Positions 7,935 through 59,885 of a DNA stretch of 64,000 bases are shown one piece after another. The stretch is from Octopus sinensis. Taxonomy: Eukaryota. Position numbers and translations under genes: made by a program. The notes beneath the pieces are model-generated. The model did not search any database, was not told the DNA's origin, and saw nothing but the letters and a program-made list of their open reading frames with translations. The DNA lies in the NCBI RefSeq assembly GCF_006345805.1, contig NC_043001.1, forward strand, positions 10,974,001 through 11,038,000. The letters run 5' to 3'. Within the stretch, counting starts at the first letter, position 1. The number at the start of each line of letters is the position of its first letter.

Positions 7935-9500
7935 CACTGTGCAGCAAATTTCAGGTTCCCAAAAAGTACAAGTTAAGTAAGACTTGTTTCAGGGTCAAAT
8001 AATTGTCCTGATTCTGATTCTGACCTTTCTTTCTCCAGATTAGGCACCGTTTTCCTCTACCATGAACCCTATGTTTTATAATATACTGCATAATGTTGCG
8101 TATTGAACACAACATTGCAAATACTGAAAGTTACAAAAAACAAAACGAAAATTTAGTTGATATAACAAAACATATATTGGTTATGAATTAAAAACACACC
8201 TGTCAGTTTAAGCGAATTTCGACCTTCTAAGACTCTTGTGAGGAGTGTGCTCTTCTTTGTTTATACCCCTGCAGTAGTCTGACAACATGCCAGGTTTCCA
8301 CTTTCCTTTGAATTGTCGCTCCATCACTGAAATATCCTGATGGAATCTTTCGCCATGTTCATCCCTCACATCACCAAGATTTTCCGCAAAAAAATCCAAA
8401 TGAGAGTGAAGCACATGAACATTTAGAGACATGTTACATCCCATATCATGGTAATGACTCAGCAGATCATTCACAACTTACACATAGTCTTATGAACGAT
8501 GGTTGCTCAGGAAGTTATCGCAAACTTTCTTGAATGACTCAAAGGCAAGCTTCTCTTTACTCTTGAGATGTGTGATGAAGGTTTCATCAAGTACAATTTT
8601 TCGAATTTGGGGCCCTATGAAGAAACCTTCTTTAATTTTAGCTTGACTCAGGGAAGGGAACTTTTCTGCAAGATATGCAAATGCATAGGATTCCTTGTCC
8701 AAGGCTTTCACAAATTGCTTAAACTAAGTTTAATATGCAAAGGTGGTAAAAAAATTATCACTTTCCACAAGTTGTTTGTGCATGATGTTGTGTTTTCCTT
8801 GCTCAATTCCATCTTGGATCGGCCAGTCCTTGCTTACATAATGTTCAGCTCTTGCTCTGGAATTCCATAAGCATACGATGCAGCAAAATGTAGTATAGCC
8901 AAGCTGAAGGCCAGTAAGCATGGCCACAACCTTAAAATCTGCACAAATATGCCAGATATGGCCATCATACTGTATGCTTGTGAAAATTGCTTTCAGATTT
9001 TCATATGATTCTTTCATGGTTGTGCTATAAGCTATGGGAACAGAAAGCAGAGTGCTACCATTGTGTAGCAGAACAGCGTTGATGCTGTCCTTCGATGCAT
9101 CTATGAAAAGTCGCCGGTTGGTTTTATCATATGGTATTTCCAGTTGCTCAAAAAGTTCAGTGATGTCATTACAAATGCATAAGTCATCTTTCATGGCGAA
9201 TAATGCAAGCAGATCCTCTGTACGTTTTCTGTACAGTGTTATCTTCACACATTTCTCAAGGAGATTACGTTCTTGGAGGATTTCAGACACAAATCATACT
9301 TCCTCATCGATACTTCCCCAATCGACATAAATGTGTCGGTCAAGACCTTCCAAAAACTGAACAAATGTAAACATCTTGAAATAGAGTTTGGTAAAAAGGG
9401 GAACCTCAAGACTAGAACAGTACCTGTTGCCATAGGCCCCTAAGGGATGATAGCAAAAGTGGATGATTGTTCCTTGTCTCAGATACCAGGAAATCAAAAG
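7935..9500 (-). mobile_element. Decayed Chapaev/CMC-superfamily DNA transposon (3' TIR plus transposase core)
   Basis: Terminus CACTGTGCAGCAAATT at 7935; transposase fragments in three frames; no second TIR found. Confidence 0.75.
8208..9433 (-). pseudogene. Chapaev-like DDE transposase, frameshifted
   Basis: RLFIDASK (D), ICADFK (D), CCIVCLW (C2C motif), KIKEGFFIGPQIRK, HVLHSHLDFF (H-x-H motif), DEHGERFHQDI (E); split over ORFs 8730-9290, 8490-8711 and 8208-8474. Confidence 0.8.
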
Positions 9501-10551: not shown

Positions 10552-10654
<103 letters not shown>

Positions 10655-10669
10655 GTTATGTATGTTTGT

Positions 10670-10882
10670 GCGTTAGTGTGTCTGTGTTTGTCCCACTAAC
10701 ATCTCTTGACAACCGATGCTGGTGTGTTTACGTCTCCGTAACTTAGCCTTTCGGCAAAAGATACCAACGATAGAATAAGTAACTAGGCTTACAAAGAATA
10801 TAAGCTCCTGGGTTGATATGCTCGACTAAAGGCGGTGCTCCAGCATGGCTGAAGTCAAATGACTGAAACAAGCAAAAGAATA
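10670..10882 (+). mobile_element. SINE family B, 3' half
   Basis: Matches the 3' half of 14199-14602; a similar 3' half lies at ~42950-43160. Confidence 0.7.
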
Positions 10883-14198: not shown

Positions 14199-14602
14199 AG
14201 GCGCAGGAGTGGTTGTGTGGTAAGTAGCTTGCTTACCAACCACATGGTTCCGGGTTGAGTCCCACTTGGGAAAGTATCTTCTACTATAGCTTCAGGCCGA
14301 CCAAAGCCTTGTGAGTGGATTTGGTAGACGGAAACTGAAAGAAGCCCGTCGTATATATGCATGTATATATATATGTGCGTGTATGTTTGTGTGTCTGTGT
14401 TTGTCCCCCTAGCATTGCTTGACAACCGATGCTGGTGTGTTTATGTCCCCGTAACTTAGCGGTTCGGCAAAAGAGACCGATAGAATAAGTACTGGGCTTA
14501 CAAAGAATAAGTCCCGGGGTCGAGTTGCTCGGCTAAAGGCGGTGCTCCAGAATGGCCGCAGTCAACTGACTGAAACAAGTAAAAGTGTAAAGAGAGTAAA
14601 AA
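14199..14602 (+). mobile_element. tRNA-derived SINE, family B
   Basis: Head AGGCGCAGGAGTGGTTGTGTGGTAAG...GGTTGAGTCC; central GTGAGTGGATTTGGTAGACGGAAACTGAAAGAAG; internal (TA/TG)n; tail GACTGAAACAAGTAAAAG; many copies in the window. Confidence 0.85.
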
Positions 14603-15966: not shown

Positions 15967-16187
15967 CTTTACTCTTTTGCTATTTTACTTGTTTCAGTCA
16001 GTTGACTGCGGCCATGCTGGAGCACCGGCTTTAGTCGAGCAAATCGACCCCGGGACTTATTCTTTTTTGTAAGCCCAGTACTTATTCTATCGGTCTCTTT
16101 TGCCGAACCGCTAAGTGACGGGGACGTAAACACACCAGCATCGGTTGTCAAGCAATGCAAGGGGGACAAACGCAGACACACAAACAC

Positions 16188-16220
<33 letters not shown>

Positions 16221-16391
16221 CATATATACGACAGGCTTCTTTCAGTTTCCGTCTACCAAATCCACTCACAAGGCTTTGGTCAGCCCGAGGCTATAGTAGA
16301 AGGCACTTGTCCAAGGAGCTAAGCAGTGGGACTGAACCCGGAACCATGTGGCTGGTAAGCAAGCTACTTACCACACAGCCACTCCTACGCC
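15967..16391 (-). mobile_element. SINE family B copy
   Basis: Full-length reverse match to 14199-14602. Confidence 0.85.
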
Positions 16392-24384: not shown

Positions 24385-24882
24385 CTTTTCTTTTTAATGT
24401 TTTTACTTGTTTCAGTCATTTAACTGCGGCCATGTGTGTGTGTGCACGCGCGCGTGTGTGTATAAGTATATGTATATTCTCTCTTTTACTCTTTTACTTG
24501 TTTCAGTCATTTGACTGCGGCCATGCTGGAGCACCGCCTTTAGTCGAGCAAATCGACCCCGGGACTTATTCTTTGTAAGCCCAGTACTTATTCCATCGGT
24601 CTCTTTTGCCGAACCGCTAAGTGACGGGGACGTAAACACACCAGCATCGGTTGTCAAGCAATGCTAGAGGGACAAACACAAACACACAAACACACACACA
24701 TACATATATATATACATATATACGACAGGTTTCTTTCAGTTTCCGTCTGCCAAATCCACTCACAAGGCATTGGTCGGCCCGGGGATACAGCAGAAGACAC
24801 TTGCCCAAGATGCCACGCAGTGGGACTGAACCCGGAACCATGTGGTTGGTTAGCAAGCTACTTACCACACAACCACTCCTGC
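24385..24882 (-). mobile_element. SINE family B copy with a duplicated tail segment
   Basis: Full copy 24478-24882 plus an extra tail fragment 24385-24432. Confidence 0.85.
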
Positions 24883-26655: not shown

Positions 26656-26990
26656 AGGCGGCGAGCTGGAAGAATCGCTAGCATAAGGCGGGTAGCTGGC
26701 AGAAACGTTAGCACGCCGGGCGAAATGCTTAGTGGTATTTCGTCTGCCGTTACGTTGTGAGTTCAAATTCCGCCGAGGTTGACTTTGCCTTTCATCCTTT
26801 CGGGGTCGATAAATTAAGTAACAGTTATGCACTGGGGTCGAGGTAATCGACTTGTGGGCAATAAAGAAATAAGAATCGCTAGCATATCGGACAAAATTCT
26901 TACCAGTATTTCTTCTGGTCATTTATGTTATGAGTTCAAATATCGCTGAGGTCAGCTATGCCTTTTATCCATTCGGGGCCAAGGAAATAG
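26656..26990 (+). mobile_element. SINE family C, duplicated head plus tandem degenerate unit
   Basis: Head repeated at 26656-26700; tail GTGGGCAATAAAGAAATAAG joined to a second degenerate unit. Confidence 0.7.
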
Positions 26991-28093
26991 ATTACTAGTC
27001 AAATGCCCTTCTCTCAAAATATTTAGTATGACCTCTGCAACGGATCGGCATCCCGTTGGGAGCGAATATCGGGATACCGGTTAATTGTACGCCATGGAAA
27101 TCAGGTAACCAGCCTTATGTGTTCGATGGCTTGACAAAAGAAAAAAAGGAAGAAAGAGAGAAAAGCTGTACGGTATTTACGTTCATGTTCCTCAGTCAGG
27201 AGTTCAATTTCATGTGAGATATAAATCTACAGTGGTTGTTGCGGTACATCATAGTGGATTTTAGGTTTAGCTTATTTCCTAATGTATTATCCAGGTGAGA
27301 TATGGCTTTCGCAGTGAACAAGAAACCTGACTCTCAGTGCAACGCTCTCTGACATGAACCGAGGTGACATAGAAAGAAATGTACTTCCCAAATACATAAT
27401 GTCACACATACAATTCTGTTTTAGTGATTGATTATTTCTGTATTTCAGAAAATTAATTCGAGTTCGGTCTTAGCAATAAAAACGTGTTAAGCTTAGATGC
27501 TGGGGTAAAAATGCCTGCTTCGTAAATACAAGGTTCCTGGATCGAATTAATAGTTGGATTCCTCAAATAAATATCGTTTCCATAACCTTAGATCAAGCCA
27601 AGTCTTTTTAATGAAAATAAACGAAGCAGAAATTCGAAGGAATTCTAGGAGATTAACAGTATGGCTTTTCGGGTGGCAGATTTAATCCGTTAGCCCGTCG
27701 TCAACTTTAATGCCGATCGAGAACAGAAAACCCTAACAACTAAGCCACGTGACTTCACTCCATTTGGTATCGATGACAAAGACGTGAGAGATTGACAAAG
27801 CCATTGAAGTCTTGAATAGAAAGACTTGCGTCATACGATCCGTCTCTGTATTCAGATGTGATTTCAAATTTTACTAAGGTCACCTTTGCCGTTCACAATT
27901 TCTTGGTCGATAAATAAAGTACCAGATCAGTATCTTTGTCAATTATTTTCTCGATTAAAAACTTTCAAGACTTTAAAAAAAATTTTGAAACTTTTGAAAC
28001 TTTTACATCTGCGAACCTTTAGGCTTCTTTATAACCGTAATATTAACAGGAAAGTTAATCTTCTACTCTTCTGCCTTTATTGTATTCGAGATT

Positions 28094-28494
28094 ACTCTCT
28101 CTTTTACTCTTTTACTTGTTTCAGTCATTTGACTGCGGCCATGCTGGAGCACCGCCTTTAGTCGAGCAAATCGACCCCAGGACTTATTCTTTGTAAGCTC
28201 AGTACTTATTCTATCGGTCTCTTTTGCCGAACCGCTAGGTGACGGGGACGTAAACACACCAGCCTCGGTTGTCAAGCAATGCTAGGGGGACAAATACAGA
28301 CACACAAACACACACACATATATATATATACATACATATATACGACAGGCTTCTTTCAGTTTCCGTCTACCAAATCCACTCACAAGGCATTGGTCGGCCC
28401 GGGGCTATAGCAGAAGACACTTGCCCAAGATGCCACGCAGTGGGACTGAACCCGGAACCATGTGGTTGGTTAGCAAGCTACTTACCACACAGCC
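28094..28494 (-). mobile_element. SINE family B copy
   Basis: Reverse match to 14199-14602. Confidence 0.85.
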
Positions 28495-29061
28495 TTGCTT
28501 TATTTTATTTTATTTCATTTCTCCACTTTATTGTAACTTATCCATTTTTTATTTTATTTTATTTCTTCTCATCTTCATCCCTACCAATCCAAGAGTGCTA
28601 TGTCATCTTACTTTTTCTCAAATGTACCTCTAATACATAAATCTTATAATTTCCCATCGTATTACACTGATTCGACCCAAGCATCTCATTAACGTTACAC
28701 GTATCTGGGGAATATTTAATTGCTTATAATTTATTTCGCAAGTATGAATTTCAGTTGATCGAACAGCAGCGGACTGCTCCTCGTTGAGATCGACGAAGAA
28801 TCCATAAGTGAGGATAAAATAACTAATAGTAAGACAATGAGATTGATTCCTGATAAGAATTCACTCCAAAACTTGACTAAACAAATCGATACCTTTCCAT
28901 ATCATGTAGAAAGAGTTTTCAAATAGAGTTTGAAGCTTTGAATAAGGAGTCCATTACTTGAAACTTGATTCTTGGTTATAGCCATTTCACTTCCTCTAGA
29001 CGCCTAATGTCTTTGAGAAAGCCATAAATATCACACAATCTTACTTCTCATCTTCACTTAA

Positions 29062-34253: not shown

Positions 34254-34344
34254 CTGTTCTTGCTTTTGTTAAACTCCAGCTCAGTTCTGATCTAGCGGAC
34301 TTACAATTTAAGACATTACAGCCGTGACCAAACCGCCTTTATAT

Positions 34345-35135
34345 CTATTTCTTTACTACCCACAAGGGGCTAAACACAGAGGGGACAAACAAGGACCAAC
34401 AAACTGATTAAGTCGATTATATCGACCCCAGTGCGTAACTGGTACTTATTTAATCGACCCCGAAAGGAGGAAAGGCAAAGTCGACCTCGGCGGAATTTGA
34501 ACTCAGAACGTAGCAGCAGGCGAAATACCTATTTCTTTGCTGCCCACAAGGGGTTACACACAGAGAGGACACACAAGGATAGACAAACGGATTAAGTCGA
34601 TTATATCGGCCCCAGTGCGTAACTAGTACTTAATTTATAGACCCCGAAAGGAGGAAAGGCAAAGTCGACCTCGGCGGAATTTGAACTCAGAACGTAGCAG
34701 CAGGCGAAATACCTATTTCTTTGCTGCCCACAAGGGGCTACACACAGAGAGGACAAACAAGGATAGACAAACGGATTAAGTCGATTATATCGGCCCCAGT
34801 GCGTAACTAGTACTTAATTTATCGACCCCGAAAGGAGGAAAGGCAAAGTCGACCTCGGCGGAATTTGAACTCAGAACGTAGCAGCAGGCGAAATACCTAT
34901 TTCTTTATAACCCACAAGGGGCTAAACACAGAGAGGACAAACAAGGATAGACAAACGGATTAAGTCGATTATATCGACCCCAGTGCGTAACTGGTACTTA
35001 TTTAATCGACCCCGAAAGGATGAAAGGCAAAGTCGACCTCGGCGGAATTTGAACTCAGAACGTAGCAGCAGGCGAAATACCGCTAAGCGTTTCAGCTGGC
35101 GTGCTAACGATTCTGCCAACTCACCACCTTTACCG
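34345..35135 (-). mobile_element. SINE family C tandem multimer, head plus 4 x 184 bp
   Basis: Junctions at 34528/9, 34712/3 and 34896/7; single head at 35081-35135. Confidence 0.9.
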
Positions 35136-35628: not shown

Positions 35629-35987
35629 CTGTAAAGGAACATTTACAAGGCCGTTAAGACTGCTAGAAATACAAGTAAAATATCCATGAAATCACGGTTT
35701 GCCATCTTTATAGAGGAAGACTTGTCATGTGATGTAGTATCCAAATGTTTGCAGGTATGGCTAAAATTAATGTCTTTGGTTGGATACCAATTCTATCACT
35801 GGAGAAATGGCTCTAAGCAATAAACAAATATGTATACACGTAACGCGCGCGCATGTGCTTACATGCATACAAACTAAGATATACACACGCACATTTTCTC
35901 TGTCTCTCTCTTTCTCTCACATACATATTCATACGGATGCACATTTATTTAATTGGCCAAGTGGTGAAGTGTGCTTCATAATGTTCG

Positions 35988-36062
35988 GGTTGCAAATTTT
36001 TTTTCCCCACGAGAGTTCTGGACCCCAGTAATGAACTCATTTGCATACAGCCAATCAGAGCT
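35988..36062 (-). repeat. Isolated inverted partial monomer of the 152-bp array (TIR-like)
   Basis: GCAAATTTT...CCCCACGAGAGTTCTGGACCCCAGTAATGAACTCATTTGCATACAGCCAATCAGAG is the reverse complement of the array's last unit (41968-42035). Confidence 0.9.
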
Positions 36063-36087
36063 CATCTTGACCTTGTTGTCATGTTAC

Positions 36088-36157
36088 CAAACACACTCTA
36101 CCAAGTAAACTTGAGACGAAGAACGGTGTTGTAAGTCGACCGATCGCCAAGTTATGC
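36088..36157 (-). CDS. Candidate exon 2 (ITWRSVDLQHRSSSQVYLVECV-)
   Basis: Acceptor CTAATTACTTGTCTCCTAATATCAG; donor TG|GTAACA chosen for phase compatibility, alternative donors exist. Confidence 0.3.
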
Positions 36158-36307
36158 CTGATATTAGGAGACAAGTAATTAGACAGATTTGCCTCGAGAC
36201 CTATTATCGGATTTTGTTATATTTTGTTATATCGACCCCATATGGTAAAGATGTGGAAGCGAAAAAAATGAGTCGAGGGTGATGGTCTAGCAAACCTCTC
36301 CCCTTAC

Positions 36308-36356
36308 TATTGTACAAAGTAACCAACAACATAAATAACGACACAGAGGCAGCCAT
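36308..36356 (-). CDS. Candidate exon 1, signal-peptide-like (MAASVSLFMLLVTLYN-)
   Basis: ATG at 36356 with an upstream in-frame stop; phase-1 donor A|GTAAGG; ab initio only. Confidence 0.35.
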
Positions 36357-36471
36357 AGTTGAGACAAGAACAAGAACAACAAAAGTTATTAAAAGAGAAA
36401 AGAAGCATGGTCATTGCTTAGCCAAGTGACCTTATCTTATCGAACATCACTCGATATGCGCACATAAATAA

Positions 36472-39400
36472 GTTTGATATTTGATCTCTGATTGGCTGTA
36501 TGCAAATAAGTTCATAAATGGTGTCCGGAACTCTCGTGGAAAAAAGAATTCGCGGGCCGGTCTGTGAAAGTCCCGACCATTATTTCGTAGTCACGCCGTG
36601 TCACCACCATAGTTGATTAAATTAGTTTGATAGTTGATCTCTGATTGGCTGTATGCAAATAAGTTCATAAATGGTGTCCGGAACTCTCGTGGAAAAAAGA
36701 ATTCGCGGGCCGGTCTGTGAAAGTCCCGACCATTATTTCGTAGTCACGCCGTGTCACCACCATAGTTGATTAACTTAGTTTTATAGTTGATCTCTGATTG
36801 GCTGTATGTAAATAATATCATAACTGGGGTCCGGAACTCACGTGGGAAAAATAATTCGCAGGCCGGTCTGTGAAAGTCCCGACCATTGTTTCGTAGTCAC
36901 GCCGTGTCACCACCATAGTTGATTAAATTAGTTTGATAGTTGATCTCTGATTGGCTGTATGCAAATAAGTTCATAACTGGGGGTCCGGAATCTCGTGGGA
37001 AAAAATTCGCGGCCCGGTCACACAAAGTCCCCACCATTCTTACGTAGTCCTGCCGTGTCACCACCATAGTTGATTAAATTAGTTTGATATTTGATCTCAG
37101 ATTGGCTGTATGTAAATAAGTTCATAACTGGGGTCCGGAACTCTCGTGGGAAAAAGAATGTGTGGCCCGGTCTCTCAATGTCCCGACCATTGTTTTGTAG
37201 TCACGCCGTGTCGGCACCATAGTTGATTAAATTAGTTTGGTAGTGGATCTCTGATTGGCTGTATGCAAATAAGTTCATAAATGGGGTCCGGAACGCTCGT
37301 GGGAAAATATTCGTGGCCCGGTCACTCAAAGTCCCCACCATTCTTACGTAGTCCTGCCGTGTCAACCCAATAGTTGATTAAATTAGTTTGATATTTGATC
37401 TCTGATTGGCTGTATGCAATTAAGTTCATATCTGGGGTCCGGAAGTCTCGTGAGAAGAAGAATTCGCGGCCCGGTCTGTCAAAGTCCTAACGATTGTTTC
37501 GTAGTCACGCCGTGTCACCACCATAGTTGATTAAATTAGTTTGATAGTTGATCTCTGATTGGCTGTATGCAAATAAGTTCATAACTGGTGTCCGGAACTC
37601 TCGTGGGTAAAAGAATTCGCGTCCCCGTCTCTATAAATCCCAAGCATTCTGACGTAGTCCCGCGGTGCCACCACCATAGTTGATTAAGTTAGTTTGATAG
37701 TTGATCTCTGATTGGCTGTATGCAAATAAGTACTTAACTGGGGTCCGGACGTCTCGTGGGAAAAAGAATTCGCCGACCGGTCTCTATAAATCCGGAGCAT
37801 TCTGACGTTGTCACGCCGTGTCACCACCATAGTTGATGAAATTAGTTTGATATGTGATCTCTGATTGGCTGAATGTAAATCAGTTCAAAAATGGTATCCG
37901 GAACTCTCGTGGGAAAAATTTTGCGTTCCGGTCACTCAAAGTCCCGACCATTCTTACGTAGTCCTACCATGTCACCACCATAGTTGATTAAATTAGTTTG
38001 ATAGTTGATCTCTGATTGGCTGTATGCAAATAAGTTCATAACTAGGGTCCGGAACTCTCGTGGGAAAAAGAATGCGTGCCCCAGTCTCTCAACGTCCCGA
38101 CCATTGTTTCGCAGTCACGCCGTGCCGCCACCATAGTTGATTCAATTAGTTTCATAGTCGATCTTTTATTGGCTGCATGCAAATAAGTTCATAACTGGCG
38201 TCCGGAACTCTCGTGGGTAAAAAATTCACGGCCCGGTCACTCAAACTCCAGACCATTCTTACGTAGTCACGCCGTGTCACCACCATAGTTGATTAAATTA
38301 GTTTGATAGTTGATCTCTGATTGGCTGTATACAAATAAGTTCATAACTGGGTCCGGAACTCTCGTGGGAAAAAAGAATGCGTGGCCCGGTCACTCAAAGT
38401 CCAGACCATTGTTTCGTAGTCACGCCGTGCCGCCACAATAGTTGATTTAATTAGTTTGATATTTTAGCTTTGATTGGCTGTATGCTAATAAGTCCATAAA
38501 TGGGGTACGGAACTCTAGTGGGAAAAAGAATGCGTGGCCCCGTCTCTCAAAGTCCCCACCATTGTTTCGTAGTCGCGCCGTGCCGCCACCATAGTTGATT
38601 TAATTAGTTTGATAGTTGATCTCTGATTGGCTGTATGCAAATATGTTCATTACTGGGGTCCGGAACTCTCGTGGGAAAAAGAATTCGCGGCCCGGTCTCT
38701 ATAAATCCGGAGCATTCTAACGTTGTCACGCCGTGTCACCGCCATAGTTGATTAAATTAGTTTGATATTTGATCTCTGATTGGCTGTATGCAAATAAATT
38801 CATAACTGGGGTCCTGAAGTCTCGTGGGAAGAAGAATTCACGGCCCGGTCTCTCAAAGTCCGACCATTGTTTTATAGTCCCGCCGTGTCACCACCATAGT
38901 TGATTAAATTAGTTTGATATTTTAGCTTTGATCGGCTGTATGCAAATAAGTTCATAACTGGGGTCCGGAACTCTCGTGGGAAAAAGAATTCGCAGCCCGG
39001 TCTCTCAAAGTCCCGACCATTGTTTCATAGTCACGCCGTGTCACCACCATAGTTGATTAAATTAGTTTGATGTTTTAGCTTTGATTGGCTGTATGCAAAT
39101 AAGTTCATAACTGGGGTCCGAAACTCTCGTGGGAAAAAATTCGCTGCCCATTCTGTCAAAGTCCTCACCATTGTTTCGTCGTCACGTCGTGTCACCACCA
39201 TAGTTGATTAAATGAGTTTGATAGTTCATCTCTGATTGGCTGTATTCAAATAAGTTCATAAATGGGGTCCGGAACTCTCGTGGGAAAAAGAATGCGTGGC
39301 CCGGTCTCTCAAAGTCCCAGCCATTGTTTCGTAGTCACGCCGTGCCGCCACCATAGTTGATTTAATTAGTTTCAAAGTTGATCTCTGATTGGCTGTATGC

Positions 39401-42037
39401 AAACAAGTTCATAACTAGGGTCCGGAACTCTCGTGGGAAAAAATTGCGGCCCGGTGACTCAAAGTCCCGGCCATTTTTACGTTGTCCTGCCGTCTCACCA
39501 CCACAGTAGATTAAATTAGCTTGATAGTTGATCTCTGATTGGCTGTATGCAAATAAGTTTATAACTTGTGTCCGGAACTCTCGTGGGAAAAAGACTTCGT
39601 GTCTCGGTCTCTATAAATCCGGAGCATTCTGATGTTGTCATGCCATGTCACCACAATAGTTGATGAAATTAGTTTGATAGTTGATCTCTGATTGGCTGTA
39701 TGCAAATAAGTACATAAATGGTGTCCGGAACTCTCGTGGGAAAAAATTCGTGGCCCGGTCACTCAAAGTCCCCAGCATTCTTACGTAGTCCTGCCGTGTC
39801 AACCCCATAGTTTGTTTAAATTACTTTGATATTTGATCTCTGATTGGCTGTATGCAAATAATTTCATAACTGGGTCCGGAACTCCCGTGAGAAGAAAAAA
39901 TCGCGGCCCGGTCTGTCAAAGTCTTGAGCATTGTTGCGTAGTCACGCCGTGTCACCACCATAGTTGATGAAATTAATTTGATATTTGATCTTTGATTGGC
40001 TGTATGCAAATAAGTTCATAACTGGGTTCGGAACTCTCGTGGGAAAAAGACTTCGTGTCCCGGTCTCTATAAATCCGGAGCATTCTGATGTTGTCATGTC
40101 ATGTCACCACAATAGTTGATGAAATTAGTTTGATAGTTGATCTCTGATTGGCTGTATGCAAATAAGTACATAAATGGTGTCCGGAACTCTCGTGGGAAAA
40201 AATTTGTGGCCCGGTCACTCAAAGTCCCCACCATTCTTACGTAGTCCTGCCGTGTCAACCCCATAGTTTGTTTAAATTAGTTTGATATTTGATCTCTGAT
40301 TGGCTGTATGCAAATAATTTCATAACTGGGTCCGGAACTCCCGTGAGAAGAAAAATTCGCGGCCCGGTCTGTCAAAGTCTTGAGCATTGTTGCGTAGTCA
40401 CGCCGTGTCACCACCATAGTTGATGAAATTAGTTTGATAGTTGATCTCTGATTGGCTGTATGCAAATAAGTTCATAACTGGGTCTGGAACTCTCGTGGGA
40501 AAAAAAATCGCGACCTGGTCTGTCAAAGTCCAGACCATTCTTACGTAGTCCTGCCGTGTCACCACCATATTTGATTAAATTAGTTTGATATTTGATCTCT
40601 GATTGGCTGTATGCAAATAAGATCATAACTAGGGTCCGGAACTCTCGCGGGAAAAAATTTCGCGACCCGGTCTGTCAAAGTCCCGACCATTGTTTCGTAG
40701 TCACGCCGTGTCACCACCATTGTTGATTAAATTAGTTTGATATTTTAGCTTTGATTGGCTGTATGCAAATAAGTTCATAACTGGGGTCCGGAAGTCTCGT
40801 GTGAAAAAGAATTCGCGGCCCGGTCACTCAAAGTCCCGACCATTGTTTCATTGTCACGCCGTGTCACCACCATAGTTGATTAAATTAGTTTGATGTTTTA
40901 GCTTTGATTGGCTGTATGCAAATAAGTACATAACTGGGGTCCGAAACTCTCGTGGGAAAAAATTCGCGGCCCGTTCTGTCAAAGTCCCGACCATTGTTTC
41001 GTAGTCGCGCCGTGTCACCACCATATTTGTTTAAATGAGTTTGATTGTTCATCTCTGATTGGCTGTATGCAAACAAGTTCATAACTGGGGTCCGGAACTC
41101 TCGTGGGAAAAAGAATTTGCGCCCCCGTCTCTATAAATCTCGAGCATTCTGACGTAGTCCCGCCGTGTCACCACCATAGTTGATTAAATTAGTTTGATAG
41201 TTGATCTCTGATTGGCTGTATGCAAATAAGTTCATAACTGGGGTCCGGAACTCTCGTGGGAAAAAATTTCGCGACCCGGTCTGTCAAAGTCCCGACCATT
41301 GTTTCGTAGTCACGCCGTGTCACCACCATTGTTGATTAAATTAGTTTGATATTTTAGCTTTGATTGGCTGTATGTAAATCAGTTCATAACTGGGGTCCGG
41401 AAGTATCGTGGGAAGAAGAATTCACGGCCCGGACTCTCAAAGTCCCGACCATTGTTTTATAGTCCTGCCGTGTCACCACCATAGTTGATTAAATTAGTTT
41501 GATATTTTAGCTTTGATTGGCTGTATGCAAATAAGTTAATAACTGGGGTCCGGAACTCTCGTGGGAAAAGATTCGTGGCCCGGTCACTCAAAGTCCCCAC
41601 CATTCTTACGTAGTCCTGCCGTGTCAACCCCATAGTTGATTAAATTAGTCTGATATTTGATCTCTGATTGGCTGTATGCAATTAAGTTCATATCTGGGGT
41701 CCGGAACTCTCGTGAGAAGAAGAATTCGCGGCTCGGTCTGTCAAAGTCCCGACCATTGTTTCGTAGTCACGCCGTGTCACCACCATAGTTGATTAAATGA
41801 GTTTGATAGTTCATCTCTGATTGGCTGTATGCAAACAAGTTCATAACTGGGATCCGGAATTCTCGTGGGAAAAAGAATTCGCGGCCCCGTCTCTATAAAT
41901 TCCGAGCATTCTGACGTAGTCCCGCCGTGTCACCACCATAGTTGATTAAATTAGTTTGATATTTTAGCTTTGATTGGCTGTATGCAAATAAGTTCATTAC
42001 TGGGGTCCGGAACTTTGGTGGGAAAAAATTTGCGTCC
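36472..42037. repeat. Tandem satellite-like array, 37 monomers of ~152 bp
   Basis: Block (C/T)TGATTGGCTGTATGCAAAT recurs every 151-153 bp from 36488 to 41970, with a few variant copies; conserved GTGTCACCACCATAGTTGATTAAATTAGTTTGAT; variable middle segment. Confidence 0.97.
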
Positions 42038-42159
42038 AGGTTTACTTCCACTGCGTGCCAACTACTCTTCTATTGCAGCCTCGAAGCGACTAATGTGTCC
42101 GGCGTGGATTTGGTAGACTATAGCAGAAAGAAGTCTGGCGTGTATGTACACACACACAC

Positions 42160-42192
<33 letters not shown>

Positions 42193-42464
42193 CACGTGCC
42201 TGAGAGTACTTTACAGCATATAAATGAAACTTCGATCGCACAATAACTGTGAAAACAGCTTAAAAGATCGGGTGAATACCGTTAGAACGTCAGCAAGTCC
42301 TGTGTGCATATTTCCTTGATCTTCTAAGCTGTTCCCACAGGCATTCTAGGTTCGAGACTTCCTTTGTTTGCTGTCAGATACCGCCAACCCACTCGGTACT
42401 TCAAATGTTTGTGTGTAAAAATGTACTCCTATCTCAAAAGTTATTATTAGGTTACGTTTATCAA

Positions 42465-42735
42465 TTTGTGTTGCTAGATTCCTGATGTGAAATCGTGTGT
42501 TGAAAGGGATATTGTTGTATTTCGGGACGGTCACTTCTTGTTGCCAAATAAAACACACGCACCATACCTTCGTTCTTCACTCGTTTATTACTCTTTTTAT
42601 TCTAAGTCATGTCCATTGTCTGGGAATCTTTCGTCACACATCTGAGACCTCTTCAGCGACACTTTCCATCTTCGTGTATGCTCTCGCTCCTCTTATACCA
42701 TTCTTCATATTAGGCATTTAAAAGAACGGTATTTA
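42465..42735 (-). mobile_element. Penelope-like pLTR fragment with hammerhead motif
   Basis: Shares its end with 46772-46850; minus strand CTGAAGA-G-GTC-loop-GAC-GAAA-GAT-TC at 42617-42662. Confidence 0.6.
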
Positions 42736-43211
42736 CTGTCAGGGATCGTTTATCTTAATGGTATAAAACGCACATCCGAAATTTAAAAGATTCTGTGGTT
42801 GTTCCTCTGTAGCGACTGGCTGGCTACCCCTTACCCTCTTCTAAGGGTATTTACCAGATCTTCTAAGCTGTTTTTACAGATATTCTACGTCTGAGAATTT
42901 CTTTTATTTTCTGCAAAATGTACACTTATGTATGTATATATCTATTTGAGTGTGTCTTTCTGCTTGTCCCCACCGCCGCTTGACAAGCCGGTGTTAGTTT
43001 GTTTACGTCCCCGTGACTTAGCAATCAGGGCAAAAGCTATCGATAGAATGCGTGCCAGGCTCTTTAAAGGAAATACGTTCTAAGATGGATTCATTCGACT
43101 AAACCGTCCACGTCAATGTACTAGCATGGCCGCAGTCCAATGATTGAAACACGTAAATAATAAAAGATATAGACAGATGATTTGACTAAGATCAAAGTGT
43201 AGATGATTCGT

Positions 43212-46713: not shown

Positions 46714-46758
<45 letters not shown>

Positions 46759-46771
46759 GTTTATATATTTG

Positions 46772-47227
46772 TTGTGCTAGATATTTTATGTGAAGTCGTG
46801 TGTTGAAACAGATATTGTTATATTTCGGAATGGTCATTTTGCCAGTTTAGCCAATAAAAACACACACAGTATATATTTGGTGTTACTATGCTTCAGCGTT
46901 ATCTATTTTTTACATTAATCTTAATTTTATTTCGGCCAGAGTCCTTTCGTCACATAGACGCACATAGAGATATAAGCATGCGCAAATGAAGACATACAAT
47001 AGAAATACAAAATGGCTGACGGTTACTAAGGTGAGACACAAATAAGAAAGAAGAAAAAAAAGGACCACTGATGCGGTCACAGGAGTGTGACGAAAGAACT
47101 CTGGCCGAAATAAGATTAAGATTAATGTAAAAAATAAATAACACTGAAGCAAAATAACACCAAATATATAGTGCGTGTGTTTTTATTGGCTAAACTGGCA
47201 AAATGATCATTCCGAAATATAACAATA
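46772..47227 (+). mobile_element. Penelope-like foldback element with hammerhead-like motif
   Basis: Inverted arms 46813-46954 and 47086-47227; CCA-CTGATGC-G-GTCAC-loop-GTGAC-GAAA-GAAC-TC-TGG at 47065-47104. Confidence 0.65.
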
Positions 47228-48424: not shown

Positions 48425-49118
48425 ATTTTAGCACAAGGCCAGCAAATTCGCTGGAGGCAGTAAGTCGATTATGTCGACCCCTGGCACAGCCGATTCCTTT
48501 TTATCGACTGCGAAAGGATGAAAGGCAAAGTTGACCTCGGCGGAATTTGAACTCAGAACGTGCAGACAGACGAATGAGAGAGCAGTGCATGTCACCAAGT
48601 GACACTGGGGTAAAATATACGAAACCCAGTATACCCATCATGACTAACCGTCTGATATGGGGTAAAATATACGAAGCCCAGTGTCACTTTGATGGCATGC
48701 ACTGCTCTCTCACTCAATAATAATAATAATAATAATGATAATAATAATAATGCTTTCTACTATAAGCACAAGACCTGAAATTTTGGTGGCAGCGTGGTAG
48801 GGCCAGTATTCAACTGGTACTTATTTTATCGATTCCCGTGAAGCTGAAAGGCAAAGTCGACCTCGGCAAGATTTGAACACATTGCGTAAAGATGGACAAA
48901 ATTGCCTTTCTACACTAGGCACAAGGCCAGAAATTTTTTGGGAAGTAGGGTAAGTCGATTAAATCGACCCTAGTACGCAAGTGGTACTTATTTCATCGAC
49001 TCCGAAAAGATGAAAGGCAAAATCGACCTCGGTGGAATTTGAACTCAGGGCGTAGCGGCAGACGAAATACAGATAAGCATTTCGTCCAGCGTGCTAACGA
49101 TTCTGCCAGCTCACCGCC
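48425..49118 (-). mobile_element. Cluster of SINE family C copies and fragments
   Basis: Three core matches (~48425-48570, 48760-48890, 48915-49118) with a family E fragment between them. Confidence 0.7.
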
Positions 49119-54632: not shown

Positions 54633-57600
54633 TCATAGGACTATGCTCAAGGTGGCTTCGTCATTCATACGTGCCATTCTTGCTACATTCACCCATCTTT
54701 TTTTAAAACATTCGCTAGACAAAACTTGCCTCTCTACTCTCACTTTCCTTTTCAAGTGGTACTTGGAAGAAGTTGATGAGAGATTGACCAGAGAGGAAGT
54801 GTTTGTCTCCAATCCTTTCAGACGCGTCCACCAGATACATTCTTTCGCCATAGCCACAAGGATGATGAAAATAGCTCTTCCTTCCCGTTTAAGGAAGGAG
54901 GCGTGACAATATTGACGATAGACTCAGCTGATAAACCGACTCGTCCCACACGTGACAGCAGTTGTTCGACATAAGCCCACAGGTCGGAAATTGTTGGACA
55001 CTGAACGAGTGCGTGCAGAACGGTTTCGTCGCTCTGACCGCATCTCGGGCAGGTCGGCCCCGTGTTTCTCGAGCCGTGTCTGTAGAGCTTATCCCGAACG
55101 GGTAGCGCTTCTCGGTAGCACTGCCAGGCCAGGGATCTCTGGAAGTTGTCCATGGGCCTGGCCCGAAAGTCGTCCCGAACAGGCGGGTCAGGTACTCCTC
55201 GTCGCCGTCCAGGTTCGCCCCGAGCTCGTCGTCGTACTTCCCCTCCACTAAATCCCTATAGAATGCTTTGGTTGTGTTGAAGTCACTTAAGGTCGACCCA
55301 GGACGGCAGAGTTGCTTGAGAGCAACGCGACACTCGCGCGGTGCCATTCGCCCTTCCTCGGCCTCTTTTTGATCCACGACTGCAGTTCGGTCATGGAGAC
55401 GAGCTGCGGGAAAGCGTGCCTCACAAACGGCGACCACACCTGTTCACCGTCGTCTACATAGAGCCAGAGATGTCGCAGTCTCAGCGCGTGTCTGCGCATC
55501 ATCAACCACGGCATGCCCAGCCCTCCTTTTACGGGTGTTGACAGCAAATGGATCGCCTGACCATCGGGACGCATCCTTTCCACAAGAAGCGAAAGAGGAT
55601 GCGTTGTTGTAGTTTGGTGATGGTAGGGTCGGGACAAGGTACGACGGTCAGGCGGTAGTAGATGACGGACGCGATGTACGTGTTCGCCACCTCCGCTCGA
55701 CCTTTTAGGGACAGTTTCTCTCGGCCCATTGCCGGGCGAGAGTGACCACCCTACTCGTTATCTCGTTCCAGTTCTTCTCCACTTGGAGGTCCGGACCAAA
55801 CCAGACCCCGAGCAACTCAACCGGGCCGTCGGTCCAGCGTCCCACGACGGAGGGCTGGTGGACGGCATGGGCTTGCTTCTCCAGGTGCCTAGTCGCAAGC
55901 CCACTGACTTTTCCCGGTTGATTTTCGCTCCTGTCACCGCTTCGTAGTTTTTCAGTGTCTCGCCGACCAGCTCGATGTGCTCGTGGCTAGACACTATGAC
56001 GGTGACGTCGTCCGCATATGCAGACACGCTCGTCCCGCATCCAATTCTCGCGGGATGCCCCTTAGAGTCGCCAGCTTCCGCAGTAGTGGCTCAAGAGTCA
56101 ATACGTATAGAAGCGCCCGAGGGGGCATCCCTGACGGACCGAACGTGCAATGTCGAAAGGTGTCGATAGATGTCCATTTACGCGAATTACCGAACGGATG
56201 CCTCTGTACAAGGCAGCTATCCAGCCGCGGAGAGACGGGACCGAAACCAGCCGCTCTCAGGACTGCCTCCAAGTATCGATGGTCTACCCTATCAAAGGCT
56301 TTCGATTGATCCAAGTTGATCAGGGCCCCACCCATGCCAGGTTCGTTAACTACCCTGTCTATGATGTAGCGCATCAGATGGAGGTTGTCATGGATGGTCC
56401 GGCCTGGCACGGCGCATGTTTGCGCCTTGTCGACCAGTTTCTCGATGACAAGCGCCAACCTCTTGGCTAGCACCTTGGCCAAAATTTTCAAGTCTGCATT
56501 AAGCAGAGTGATGGGCCTAAAGTTATCTATTACATTTCCCTTGTTTAGATCTTTCTTCAGCAGTGTTACGGCTCCTCGGCTCACAAAACCAGGAATGCTC
56601 CCGTTTTACTGCCAGTTGCAGTACACCGCCGCCAAGAGATCTCCAAACAAGTCTGGCATACAATTGTAAAGCTCGTAGGGTAGACCATCCAAACCCGGTG
56701 ATTTGTCCCTCGAGCATTCTGCCATCGCTTTCCGCACTTCCGCCGCCGTGATGGCACCTTCGCAGCACCCTGCCCTTCTTGTCGAGAGTCGTGGTAGGCT
56801 ATGTAGGTAGGCACTGAAGTCCACCCTACGTTCTTGCCCTCCACTCGTTCCGAACAGTCGGGCAAAATGCTGCTGAAAGGCCTCACACATTTTACTTGGC
56901 TCGAGCAATTCGCGCCCCTGTTCATCTACCAGTGACCGAATGGTGGCTTTGTTGCCCTGTTGCGCCTCTGCCACCCGGGCCCTCTCGCGGCTCCAACACC
57001 TTCGTTCCTTAGAGCACGCATCCTAGCTCTGACAGCACATCCTTCGTGTTTAGCGTTGAAGTGTTGGTCGAGGGCCAACCTCGCCGCCAAAACGTCGGAT
57101 GCGATGCCGCTTCTAATTGCCTCTTCTAGCTTCTTAAGTAGCTCACCCTCTACTCTATTTCTATCTATGGCTAGTGCTTTGCTGTACCTAATCGCTTCTG
57201 CTTTTACTGCTCTCTTGAGGGCAAACCACCATTTGTTGTTGATGATGGCTCCCGTCAAAGCCCTCTTTACTAGTGTGCTAATCCGGTCTCTGAAAACTTG
57301 TCTCGATGGGAAAGACGCGTTTAGTTTCCAGTATCCGGGACCCTGCCTAAGTGTCTTACCTAAGTCTAGCGTACATGTCACAAGTTTGTGATCCGTGTAG
57401 CTGACTATGTGGAATTGTGGACATCCTATGCTATCTCTATCTACTGTCCTACACAGTATCCTATCTAGATACGATCTCGACGACCCGATGCGGTTGCTCC
57501 ATGTCCACGTTGGCGCATTCGGGTGGTCTAGTCGGAACCTGTCAGACAGTTGAAAGCGTCTGAGCAGGTCTCTGAGGCATTTGCATCCCCGTCTATTCCT

Positions 57601-58070
57601 ATCTCTACCCACGTAGTCTACATGCGTGTCCAAGGTAGCATTCCAATCCCCCACTAAGAGTAAAGGACGAGACGTTCCCAAGAAAAACTTCTAGACGTTG
57701 AAAGAATCCGCCCGACCTGTTAAGGGCGGTGCGTAAACTGATACGAGTCGAAAAGCGCACCCATTGCTGCCGTCGACATCCAGGACGACCAGTCTACCCT
57801 CCGGGTCTACGAATATTGTCCTTACATTGAGATCCAGACTCTTGTGTGAAAAAGTACCGCGGTGCCACTACCGCCCATTCTCGGCAGACAGGGGGAAAAA
57901 TAAATGTTGAACTGTCCGCCAAACATGGTCTTTAGGGCCCGCGGATTGTGGAGTCTGGTCTCGCTTATGGCTATGATTTCTAACTTATGTGACTTTATGT
58001 CATTTAAGAGGTACCCTTGTTTCCAAGGGGACCCCAAGCCACGCGCATTTACACAACCAATCTTGATCAT
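54633..58070 (-). pseudogene. LINE ORF2: APE endonuclease plus reverse transcriptase, multiple frameshifts
   Basis: IGCVNARGL, IAISETR, LLVGDWNA, SYLDRILC, TDHKLV (APE); KSPGLDGLP, FRPITLLNADLKILAK, LDQSKAFDRVDH, YADDVTV (RT); CPRCGQSDETVLHALVQC. Confidence 0.92.
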
Positions 58071-58101
58071 AGTTCTAATGAATTAGAATACAGAGGGTTA
58101 C

Positions 58102-59885
58102 TTACTGCTCGAAAGTTTTTGCTTTCTCCTCCGTTGGTTTGTCCTCGAGAAGATCCCAGTACAGTTTCTTTGTGAGATATTTTTGGCATTTACCAACCGC
58201 ACTGGGGAAAATGCCTTTGAGTGTGTGGTGCAGACTTTTGGAGATGTGTAATATTTTGATGTGGTCTGGTGGTGTTGTGTATGGGTGATGTTTGTTTTTA
58301 TGTCATCTGTTATGTGTTTGTTTTTGATTGGATGTATTCCATCAAATTTGTGTTTTTGGTGTGTCTATGGCTGTGAGCATGTTTGCTGTATATGTTTTTG
58401 TGGTGTTGGTGGGTGTGGCTGTTGTTTGCGTTGGGTTTTGAAATGTCTTCGGGAGATGTATTTCCCCCTGCTTTGTTCGTGTTTGCATTTGGTTTGGTTG
58501 TGTTTCTGCTCTTTATTTTCCTTCTTTTGTGTAGCTATTTGCCATTCCTCACTGGTTCGTCTTCCGACGAAATTTCTGAGGAATCAGAAGGGGGTAGGGT
58601 ATGTTGTGGGCTTCTATGTATGTCTGTGTAAGTGGTTTGTGTTGTTGTTGGTTGTTGAGTGTTGTGGTGTGTTGAGTGCGGTATAAGGGATGGGGGATCA
58701 GTTTGTGTGTGTTTTCTTTGTTTTTCTGTTCCTTTGGGTTTTGCTGTTGATGGTGGTGTTGGTATTTTTTCAGGTGTCGAGTGGTTTTTGGTTGATGACG
58801 GATTAGCTTGGTGTGCTTCTCTTGTCGTCTTCTGTGTTGATGGTGGTGTGGGTAGTAGAGCTTTTTTTCCGGAGTGCTTTGGTTGTGGTAGTGGTTGTTG
58901 TTGTTGCTCTTGGTGTGCAGTGGTTGGGCACGTCTTTTTCAAGTGTGTTTCGCTTCCACACAAATAGCAGCGTGGTCGCCTGCCCTCTACCACTATATAG
59001 AGTTTGTAGCCTCCTGGCAGTTCTATAGCGGTGGGTATCTTCTCTCTTGCTGCTTCATCCAATTGAAGCAGGAATTCGATTGATTTGCCCACATAGTCTT
59101 TCTCTCCTAGAACCGCGATTTCCAGGATGTTTGTCTCTGACATTGTCTCTGACATTTCAAAGCAGATGGCAGAGACCAACCATGTGTTTTTCGACATCAA
59201 ATGGTATGTTTTTTATTTGGACTTTCGTGACCCTTTTGTTTAAATAGACTGGTATCATTACCAAGTCGTCCGAATGCAGCTCCAATGTGGAAAAACGTTT
59301 TGCTAAACTTTCGTTGAGGAAACGTACTTGGACTGTACCAAATTTGTTTCCCCAACTGATATATTCCTTGGAGTCCCATGCAGGACGAAGGTATTTATCG
59401 ATTTTTTCCTGCGGTGCATTTGCTGTTCTTCTTGTTTTTTTGTTTATTACTTTATAAATTATTGTTTTTTTTTGTGTGTTTTCCACGATGTGTTGTGGAA
59501 TATGAAGGTGAAATTTGTCTCCTTCTTTGGAGAAGAGTGCCTTTGTGCGGTTTATCTCTTGTGTGGTGAATGTTACAATTGTTCTTTTTGTTTTGTTACG
59601 TCCGCAAAATTCGTTTTGAATTTGGCAGTAGAAGTGTTAATTGTGGCAGTGTTAATTGAAGTCATGGTAGGTGTTGGTGTTGGCGGTGATTAGCAGCAGA
59701 AGGCTTGGATGTAGCATTTGACGTCGTAGTAGTGGTGTTGGTGTTGGGCGGTGTTGTCTTTGGTAGGTGGCTTTGTGCCAATTTCGTTGTTGTTGTTGTT
59801 GGTGGTGATGGTGGTGGTGCTGGCATTCATGTTTTCGTTTGTATTCATTTTTGAAATCCCTTTCTCTGTCCCTTATCATCAACAA
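58102..59885 (-). pseudogene. LINE ORF1 (RRM-like region plus CCHC zinc knuckle), frameshifted
   Basis: GTVQVRFLNE...VTKVQIKNIPFDV, then GRRPRCYLCGSETHLKKTC (C-x2-C-x4-H-x4-C); ends ...KAKTFEQ* just before ORF2; the start is uncertain and could lie near 60096. Confidence 0.75.

What the first reader, a model, noticed from the sequence alone, without database searches (positions are those of the whole stretch)
35988..42037. The array looks like one hugely expanded terminal inverted repeat of a TIR element
Seen: a single inverted partial monomer at 35988-36062 mirrors the last array unit (41968-42035). Both carry the rare GTTCATTACTGGGG variant where most monomers read CATAAC; it also occurs near 38648. 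They stop at matching points (CGGGTTGCAAA versus reverse complement CCTGGACGCAAA). About 400 bp of unique sequence lies between the lone copy and the array. No TSD could be read. Inference: a non-autonomous TIR element whose right arm amplified 37-fold, i.e. a satellite born from a transposon end. This is analogous to satellite arrays carried inside Helentron/MITE-like elements in bivalves.
Basis: partly seen in the sequence, partly recalled or inferred. Interest (0 to 1): 0.7.

Follow-up and report, generated by a model that had tools for sequence, protein, structure and literature searches.

The report
Transposon with one end amplified 37-fold
A 6-kb non-coding cut-and-paste transposon sits here whose right inverted end has grown into a 37-copy tandem array, which is a clear but not new example of satellite DNA arising from a transposon end.

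Summary
A 153-bp tandem array (37 units, 36465-42033) faces a single inverted partial unit (35992-36067) across 397 bp of unique DNA.

The ~76-bp shared core also occurs, ~86% identical over the full arm (about 90% in the best ungapped 65-70 nt), in an unrelated eukaryote assembly (ENA ERZ26222911). There it forms the outward-facing termini of 1.0-2.8-kb non-coding elements. Their inverted arms are 124-155 nt and reach about 400 nt. Four of six elements have perfect 9-bp target-site duplications at a CC(C/G)GG-type target.

Applying the same terminus (5'-GCRAAWTT...) to the window bounds the element at 35992-42033. It is flanked by GTTCGGGTT and GTCCAGGTT (7/9), and both fit that target motif. 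The right flank is the body of a SINE-like repeat.

The bivalve Helentron comparison does not fit. The architecture matches Foldback / Mutator-like elements (Rehavkus, Tetris, Tm1, Muta1), which have 8-10-bp TSDs and tandem repeats in their inverted termini.

No transposase was found, so the superfamily is inferred. Copy number in the host genome could not be tested.

Verdict: a new member of a known kind, of moderate interest.

The parts
35983..35991 (+). Left target-site duplication, GTTCGGGTT
   Evidence: It lies immediately outside the terminus defined by the ENA elements. It matches the right copy 7/9 and fits the target motif nnCC(C/G)GGnn.
35992..36067 (+). Left terminal inverted repeat (76 bp), the lone inverted partial monomer. 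Terminus 5'-GCAAATTTTTTTTCCCCACGAG; carries an octamer (ATTTGCAT) and a CCAAT box (AGCCAATCAGAG).
   Evidence: Inverted-repeat search. It is 88% identical to the monomer-consensus core, 83.5% to the terminal unit and 86% to the ENA L006 arm. Termini align in A1.
36068..36464 (.). Internal unique non-coding region (397 bp)
   Evidence: No other copy in the window. No similarity to the monomer or to the interiors of the ENA elements. No ORF above 50 aa.
36465..41946 (+). 36 full 150-153-bp tandem units. Each is the TIR core (monomer positions 14-89, ending in the terminus GAATTCGC) plus 77 bp of non-core sequence that begins with a target-like 9-mer, GGCCCGGTC.
   Evidence: TRF, anchors, alignment and conservation profile. 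Block duplications are seen, for example units 21-23 copied to 24-26 and units 1/2 at 98.7%.
41947..42033 (-). Terminal partial unit, which is the right terminal inverted repeat (core 41958-42033). It ends at the terminus ...GGGAAAAAATTTGC.
   Evidence: It stops at monomer position 89, the same point as the left arm and as the ENA termini.
42034..42042 (+). Right target-site duplication, GTCCAGGTT
   Evidence: Matches the left copy 7/9 and fits the target motif. From 42035 it corresponds to SINE consensus ~50-57, TCCGGGTT.
42035..42145 (+). Flanking host DNA: the body of a SINE-like interspersed repeat that begins at about consensus position 50. It continues at 42927-43167 after a nested insertion.
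   Evidence: Local alignment, 0/2000 shuffles reach the score. nhmmer E=4.9e-14. BLAST to other copies.

Best explanation
Window 35992-42033 is one old insertion of a non-autonomous cut-and-paste DNA transposon of a Foldback / Mutator-like type.

**How it would move.** A transposase supplied in trans by an autonomous relative (not found) would bind the ~76-bp terminal inverted repeats (5'-GCRAAWTT...CCAATCAGAG). It would cut and reinsert the element at a CC(C/G)GG-type target with a 9-bp stagger. Here that gave the TSD GTYCRGGTT, apparently in the B-box-like region of a SINE-like repeat.

**How the array arose.** The right end is not a single TIR. It is an array of 36 full 153-bp units plus a terminal partial unit that ends at the true terminus. 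Each full unit contains a complete copy of the TIR core, including the terminus. The array arose by tandem duplication of a 153-bp segment ending at or straddling the right terminus. It then grew by unequal exchange or replication slippage of one- to many-unit blocks, and some of that growth is much younger than the insertion.

**Shown:** inverted arms, a common terminus, an imperfect 9-bp TSD, the family's TIR/TSD behaviour in another genome, and block duplications.

**Inferred:** the superfamily, trans-mobilisation, the order of array birth and insertion, and any promoter or transposase-binding role of the octamer/CCAAT-bearing core.
For: **The core in a second genome**
- Translating the core in several frames recovered about 17 ORF-bearing contigs from ENA ERZ26222911.
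- In six of eight fetched loci the core occurs as an inverted pair with termini outward.
- Elements are 1,027-2,758 bp. Arms are 124-155 nt at 97-99%, and reach about 400 nt in L005 and L008. None has coding capacity.
- Four of six have perfect 9-bp TSDs, one is off by a single base, and one matches 6/9.
- Sequences outside the terminus differ in every copy.

**The same terminus in the window**
- It gives flanks GTTCGGGTT and GTCCAGGTT, matching 7/9. Unrelated target sites of the family match 4.6/9 on average and 0 of 27 pairs reach 7.
- Both flanks carry the invariant C4 and G6 of the target motif.
- Alignment A1 shows all arms starting at GC(G/A)AA.
- There is only one inverted copy and one array in 64 kb.
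- The right flank is a SINE-like repeat starting mid-element at a CCGGG site.

**Other support**
- An ENA element (L011) has a 46-bp x2.1 tandem duplication of the CCAAT/octamer part in its right arm only. Asymmetric TIR-internal duplication therefore recurs in this family.
- Unit pairs at 98.7% identity, against about 85% on average and 76-88% to the left arm, show continued in-situ growth.
- Published elements share the architecture: Rehavkus, with a 9-bp TSD and a minisatellite before the 3' TIR (PMC6446971) and up to 50 repeats or >11-kb inverted termini in Tribolium (PMC12581902); Tetris (PMC4079207); Tm1 (PMC3169594); Muta1 (PMC5225508).
Against: - The TSD is imperfect (7/9). Because the family has a target preference, two independent target sites would reach 7/9 perhaps up to 9% of the time, assuming a per-site match of about 0.5.
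- The left flank cannot be shown to be the missing SINE head (z about 1; nhmmer adds no score). There is therefore no empty-site proof.
- No transposase and no second copy were found in the window.
- The host genome could not be searched, so mobility of this particular array-bearing form is unproven.
- The left arm is only 76 bp, against at least 124 bp in the ENA elements.
- Each internal unit carries a target-like 9-mer after its terminus. No tested model explains this.
Confidence: 0.78

Rival explanations
1. Two separate remnants lie side by side: a solo or truncated left end of one element, and a TIR-derived satellite array (or the right end of another element). They are inverted relative to each other by chance and are not one mobile unit.
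For: The TSD is only 7/9, and target preference inflates chance similarity. The left flank is not demonstrably the other half of the SINE. Solo ends do exist in the family (L001).
Against: This needs two insertions plus deletions that leave exactly one outward-facing left terminus and one outward-facing right terminus 6 kb apart, with no other core copy in 64 kb. None of 27 unrelated TSD pairs reaches 7/9.
Confidence: 0.13
2. This is an ordinary satellite whose first unit was locally inverted (array-edge rearrangement). The resemblance to a transposon end is incidental.
For: A weak similarity of the left flank to the monomer's non-core half (27/3000 shuffles) could mean the inverted copy is a degenerate full unit.
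Against: That similarity disappears with stricter gap penalties or once the TSD 9-mer is removed (p=0.06-0.3). The inverted copy ends where the ENA elements' TIR terminus lies and is followed by a target-type 9-mer. The core is shown to be a TIR with TSDs elsewhere.
Confidence: 0.04
3. The conserved ~80-bp core is a host cis-regulatory module (an octamer plus an NF-Y CCAAT box, as in histone H2B-type promoters) that was amplified here. It is not a mobile-element end.
For: It carries a perfect ATTTGCAT and AGCCAATCAGAG 4 bp apart. It is ~86% identical over the arm (about 90% in the best ungapped stretch) between genomes that share nothing else. The ENA copies sit in GC-rich stretches with GCGCATGCGC palindromes.
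Against: In the ENA genome it is multi-copy, always at the ends of inverted pairs with 9-bp TSDs and different flanks. No gene lies next to it. A promoter inside a TIR is compatible with the transposon reading (MuDR TIR promoters; from my own knowledge).
Confidence: 0.03

Closest known systems
Rehavkus elements (MuDR/Mutator-related; Repbase; Dupeyron et al. 2019, PMC6446971; Tribolium satellites, PMC12581902)
   Same: A 9-bp TSD and TIRs of tens to hundreds of bp. A mini-satellite lies immediately before the 3' TIR. Subterminal tandem repeats vary in number (up to 50 repeats, inverted termini >11 kb) and can seed satellite arrays.
   Different: No PHD-finger/MULE transposase was found here. 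Rehavkus is so far reported from arthropods and annelids. Here the repeat unit contains the terminal TIR sequence itself, and only one arm is expanded (1 versus 37).
Tetris foldback transposon and its TIR-220 satellite in Drosophila virilis (PMC4079207)
   Same: Non-autonomous, with 8-10-bp TSDs. About 220-bp tandem repeats inside the TIR partly derive from the TIR's outer domain and form kb-size satellite-like arrays. The autonomous partner is unknown.
   Different: Tetris keeps a long non-repeated flanking domain outside the repeats, and both arms carry repeats. Here the array runs to the very terminus, on one arm only.
Tm1 (Meloidogyne) and Muta1 (Aedes aegypti): Mutator/Phantom elements with Foldback-type TIRs (PMC3169594, PMC5225508)
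   Same: 8-9-bp TSDs, long composite TIRs with tandem subrepeats, and many non-autonomous derivatives that share only the ends.
   Different: Their subrepeats are 9-15 bp rather than 153 bp. No target preference is reported for them, whereas this family prefers nnCC(C/G)GGnn.
   Same: A tandem array is carried inside, or derived from, a non-autonomous mobile element.
   Different: Helentrons are rolling-circle elements without this kind of TIR pair and without a 9-bp TSD. Their arrays are internal cargo, not a multiplied terminus.

Membership tests
Class II cut-and-paste (TIR) DNA transposon | Terminal inverted repeats with a common terminus | tested here: met
   Window arms 35992-36067 and 41958-42033. 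The ENA arms share the same start, GC(G/A)AA.
Class II cut-and-paste (TIR) DNA transposon | Target-site duplication of fixed length flanking the TIRs | tested here: met
   9 bp. Perfect in 4 of 6 ENA elements and 7/9 in the window.
Class II cut-and-paste (TIR) DNA transposon | Multiple copies at unrelated sites in one genome | tested here: inconclusive
   Met in the ENA genome (at least 8 loci with different flanks). The window's own genome was not available, and there is only one copy in the 64 kb.
Mutator-like superfamily (MULE, including Foldback/Phantom/Rehavkus) | 8-11-bp TSD, usually 9 | tested here: met
   9 bp. The criterion is from PMC6446971.
Mutator-like superfamily (MULE, including Foldback/Phantom/Rehavkus) | Long TIRs (commonly >100 bp) | tested here: met
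   ENA arms are 124-155 nt and reach about 400 nt. In the window the left arm is only 76 bp, while the right arm is an array of 37 core copies.
Mutator-like superfamily (MULE, including Foldback/Phantom/Rehavkus) | DDE transposase of the MULE type encoded by autonomous members | not testable with these tools
   No transposase ORF in the window or in the ENA elements. Searching by TIR for an autonomous copy needs the genomes. Merlin (8-9-bp TSD) is therefore not excluded.
Rehavkus | Mini-satellite immediately before the 3' TIR / subterminal tandem repeats | tested here: met
   36 tandem units abut the terminal TIR unit on one side only. A 46-bp x2.1 duplication lies in the right arm of L011.
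Rehavkus | PHD-finger-containing transposase | not testable with these tools
   No autonomous copy is available.
Helentron/Helitron-borne satellite | Rolling-circle element ends (no TIR pair of this kind, no multi-bp TSD) | tested here: not met
   The element has 76-bp inverted termini and a 9-bp duplication.
Satellite DNA | Long head-to-tail array of one monomer | tested here: met
   37 units, 5.6 kb, about 85% mean pairwise identity.
Satellite DNA | High genomic abundance / many arrays | not testable with these tools
   No access to the host genome. No satellite-derived ORFs from this species were found in the protein collection.

The most novel reading that the evidence does not exclude
The ~76-80-bp TIR core, with its perfect octamer and NF-Y CCAAT pair, is ~86% identical over the arm (about 90% in the best ungapped stretch) between two genomes that share no other repeat in 115 kb versus 64 kb. 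This could reflect recent horizontal transfer of a Foldback/Mutator-like family between distant animal lineages. It could also reflect a TIR that doubles as a strongly constrained inward promoter. In that case the 37-copy array would be a dense cluster of transcription-factor and transposase-binding sites, offering 37 alternative right termini and able to drive alternative transposition or local regulatory effects.
Probability: 0.12. Interest if true: 0.6.

Novelty: new member of a known kind. Interest (0 to 1): 0.36.

Why it matters
This is a clean, fully bounded snapshot of how a satellite is born from a transposon end: the intact left arm, the unique interior, a right arm multiplied 37-fold up to the true terminus, and a readable TSD. 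It adds a family with an unusual CC(C/G)GG target preference and a promoter-like TIR core that is shared across unrelated genomes. For annotation, it means this 153-bp satellite should be masked and classified as transposon-derived. Its arrays may mark sites prone to transposase-mediated rearrangement. It does not reveal a new mechanism.

Tried and rejected
1. **Monomer derived from the neighbouring SINE-like repeat** (the A-box-like GATTGGCTGTATG resembles GAGTGGCTGTGTG). Local alignments were not better than shuffles, and nhmmer with the SINE profile finds nothing in the array.
2. **Left flank as the missing SINE head** (paralogous empty-site proof). The alignment is colinear and ends at the junction, but z is about 1, 16% of window 60-mers score as well, and nhmmer adds no score. 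Left as 'consistent, unproven'.
3. **Inverted copy extending beyond the terminus as a degenerate full monomer.** 27/3000 shuffles with permissive gaps, but not robust.
4. **Monomer non-core or 397-bp spacer homologous to ENA element interiors.** No.
5. **RNA gene or tRNA origin.** No Rfam hit at gathering score and no ARAGORN hit.
6. **Histone-type promoter module.** Rejected because the ENA copies are TSD-flanked inverted pairs with no adjacent gene.
7. **Exact-pattern scans.** Bacterial genomes and JGI metagenomes gave only chance 20-mer hits in bacterial DNA (L002-L004).
8. **Host identification by exact ORF look-up.** Failed. The impression that the window looks cephalopod-like is recollection only and was not tested.
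Full report
**1. What is in the sequence**

The window is eukaryotic DNA, dense in microsatellites and interspersed repeats.
- TRF reports one array at 36465-42027 with period 153, 36.5 copies and 85% matches.
- A 17-nt anchor (GATTGGCTGTATGCAAA) occurs 37 times in direct orientation at 150-153-bp spacing. It occurs once on the opposite strand, at 36040-36056, and nowhere else in the 64 kb.
- The inverted copy pairs with many monomers over 63-70 nt at 84-91%.
- Aligning all units with the reverse complement of the lone copy shows homology from monomer position 14 to position 89. The last array unit stops at the same position.
- The variant GTTCATTACTGGGG is found only in unit 15 (38648), the last unit (41995) and the lone copy.
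- The 397 bp between the lone copy and the array is unique in the window and unrelated to the monomer.

**2. Finding relatives**

No eukaryotic DNA collection was available. I therefore translated the monomer and searched the large predicted-protein collection for accidental ORFs that run over related DNA.
- One frame gave a single hit.
- A concatenate of the other open frames gave 17 hits.
- All hits come from one ENA assembly, ERZ26222911.
- The eight contigs fetched (115 kb in total) share nothing with the window except this core and two microsatellite matches. The assembly therefore comes from a different organism.
- Exact-pattern scans of bacterial genomes and JGI metagenomes gave only chance hits.

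**3. What the core is in that genome**

In six of eight loci the core occurs twice, inverted, with the GCGAAATTC... end outward and the CCAAT end inward.
- The elements are 1,027-2,758 bp and non-coding.
- Arms are 124-155 nt at 97-99% identity. In L005 and L008 the inverted homology continues to about 400 nt, so these elements are foldback-like.
- The ORF translations diverge immediately outside the terminus, so the flanks differ from copy to copy.
- Using GCGAAATT as the first base of the element gives these TSDs:

| Locus | 9-bp duplication |
|---|---|
| L005 | TGCCGGGCA, perfect |
| L006 | GCCCGGGGA, perfect |
| L008 | GTCCCGCTT, perfect |
| L009 | TCCCCGGAG, perfect |
| L007 | off by one base (low-coverage assembly) |
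| L011 | 6/9 (most diverged element) |

- The target sites share a motif, nnCC(C/G)GGnn. Position 4 is C and position 6 is G in all ten sites.
- L011 carries a 46-bp x2.1 tandem duplication of the CCAAT/octamer segment in its right arm only.

**4. Applying this to the window**

The window arms align with the ENA arms from the same first bases, GC(A/G)AA.
- The element is 35992-42033 (6,042 bp).
- The 9-mers just outside are GTTCGGGTT (35983-35991) and GTCCAGGTT (42034-42042). They match 7/9 and both fit the target motif.
- Against random sequence, 7/9 has p of about 0.001-0.004.
- Against the family's own target preference the test is weaker. Unrelated TSDs match 4.6/9 on average, with a maximum of 6 in 27 pairs. 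A per-site match probability of 0.5 would give p of about 0.09.
- The right flank from 42035 is the body of a ~400-bp SINE-like repeat starting at about consensus position 50, at its CCGGG site (0/2000 shuffles; nhmmer E=4.9e-14). It resumes at 42927 after a nested insertion.
- If the element inserted into that repeat, the left flank should be the repeat's first ~55 nt. The alignment is colinear and ends at the junction, but it is not significant. I treat it as consistent only.

**5. Arm and array relationships**

| Comparison | Identity |
|---|---|
| Left arm vs monomer-consensus core | 88% |
| Left arm vs terminal unit | 83.5% |
| Left arm vs ENA arm | 86% |

- At the positions where the left arm differs from the array consensus (AGTA vs AGTT, CTCATTTGC vs CTTATTTGC, GAGCT vs GAGAT), it agrees with the ENA copies. 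The CATTAC variant in the left arm, unit 15 and the last unit is therefore the ancestral state. It is retained at the array edge and is not a special link between the two ends.
- Monomers average about 85% pairwise identity. Units 1/2, 22/25 and 23/26 are 98.7% identical, and blocks recur at lags of 3, 4, 5, 12 and 28 units.
- The array has therefore kept growing by block duplication long after the insertion, whose TSD and arms are 12-22% diverged.

**6. How the array probably began (inference)**

Each full unit is the 76-bp TIR core ending in the terminus, followed by 77 bp that has no counterpart in the left arm, in the ENA elements or in the present flank. This 77 bp begins with GGCCCGGTC, a good match to the target motif. 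Two models fit.
- **(a) Duplication straddling the right end.** A 153-bp tandem duplication straddled the right end at an earlier locus. The outer copy of the terminus was then used, so a fossil TSD and flank became internal.
- **(b) Duplication of the subterminal 153 bp.** This would have been triggered by microhomology between an internal GGCCCGGTC and the flanking TSD.

I could not discriminate between the two.

**7. Classification**

A 9-bp TSD, long and composite inverted termini, non-autonomous derivatives sharing only the ends, and a tandem array directly before one TIR are the published hallmarks of Mutator-related Foldback-type elements:
- Rehavkus: 9-bp TSD, TIRs of 26-400 bp, a minisatellite before the 3' TIR (PMC6446971). 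In Tribolium, up to 50 repeats, >11-kb inverted termini, and expansion to 80-kb satellites (PMC12581902).
- Tetris: 8-10-bp TSD, with TIR-220 repeats seeding satellite arrays (PMC4079207).
- Tm1 (PMC3169594) and Muta1 (PMC5225508).

No transposase was found in the window. The only coding remnants there are a frameshifted LINE. None was found in the ENA elements either. Superfamily membership therefore rests on structure alone, and Merlin (8-9-bp TSD) is not excluded. The Helentron analogy fails on TIR and TSD.

**8. Rivals**

- **Two independent remnants.** Possible, because the TSD is imperfect and the family has a target preference. It is less parsimonious.
- **An array-edge inversion.** Contradicted by the terminus and target-motif coincidence. 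The supposed extension of the inverted copy beyond the terminus is not robust.
- **A host promoter module.** Contradicted by the TSD-flanked, multi-copy behaviour in the ENA genome. The octamer plus CCAAT pair may still act as a promoter inside the TIR, as known for MuDR (my own knowledge, untested here).

**9. Verdict**

The phenomenon of a satellite arising from a foldback-type transposon end is already documented. This is a new member of a known kind and of moderate interest.

The extra points of interest are:
- the extreme one-sided expansion up to the terminus;
- the CC(C/G)GG target preference;
- the high conservation of the TIR core between unrelated genomes.

Noticed in passing
window 2840-3325 and 34341-35081: Two short tandem arrays (2.6 and 4 copies) of a 184-bp unit. 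About 120 bp of this unit also occurs dispersed as single copies (7612-7731, 26734-26853, 48461-48574, 48951-49070). This is a second interspersed repeat forming tandem arrays in the same window.
   Followed up: partly
window 14211-14599(+), 15972-16380(-), 24475-24874(-), 28090-28500(-), 1008-1198, 1329-1753, 10636-10882: A ~400-bp SINE-like family with an internal TA/TG microsatellite and an A/B-box-like 5' part (by eye; ARAGORN finds no tRNA). The copy at 42035-43167 flanks the element.
   Followed up: partly
window 42146-42926: An insertion nested in the flanking SINE-like repeat: an (AC)n run followed by a ~700-bp unit with 78-nt inverted ends (42210-42287 and 42839-42917, 78%). Part of its interior (42453-42566) recurs at 46756-46868 and 47167-47227.
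   Followed up: no
window 54818-59200 (-): A frameshifted non-LTR retrotransposon remnant. It has endonuclease (Exo_endo_phos), reverse transcriptase (RVT_1) and zf-RVT pieces in separate ORFs.
   Followed up: partly
window 8730-9290 (-): A 186-aa ORF with a cysteine-rich C-terminal part. It has no Pfam hit and is not on record as a called gene. It may be a remnant of another mobile element.
   Followed up: partly
L011 3791-3885: The right TIR of an ENA element carries a 46-bp x2.1 tandem duplication that includes the CCAAT/octamer segment. The left TIR lacks it.
   Followed up: yes
L005, L006, L007, L008, L009, L011 element flanks: This transposon family shows a clear target preference, nnCC(C/G)GGnn. 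Position 4 is C and position 6 is G in 10 of 10 sites. This is unusual for Mutator-like elements, for which Muta1 and Tm1 are reported to have no preference (PMC5225508, PMC3169594).
   Followed up: partly
L001 9790-10200 and ENA TIR inner parts: The inner part of the ENA TIRs and the nearby DNA carry GCGCATGCGC palindromes in a GC-rich stretch. With the octamer and the CCAAT box, this makes the arm look promoter-like.
   Followed up: no
window array, monomer positions 90-98 of every unit: Each internal unit has a target-like 9-mer (GGCCCGGTC) directly after its copy of the terminus, as if a fossil TSD were repeated with the unit. No tested model explains this.
   Followed up: partly
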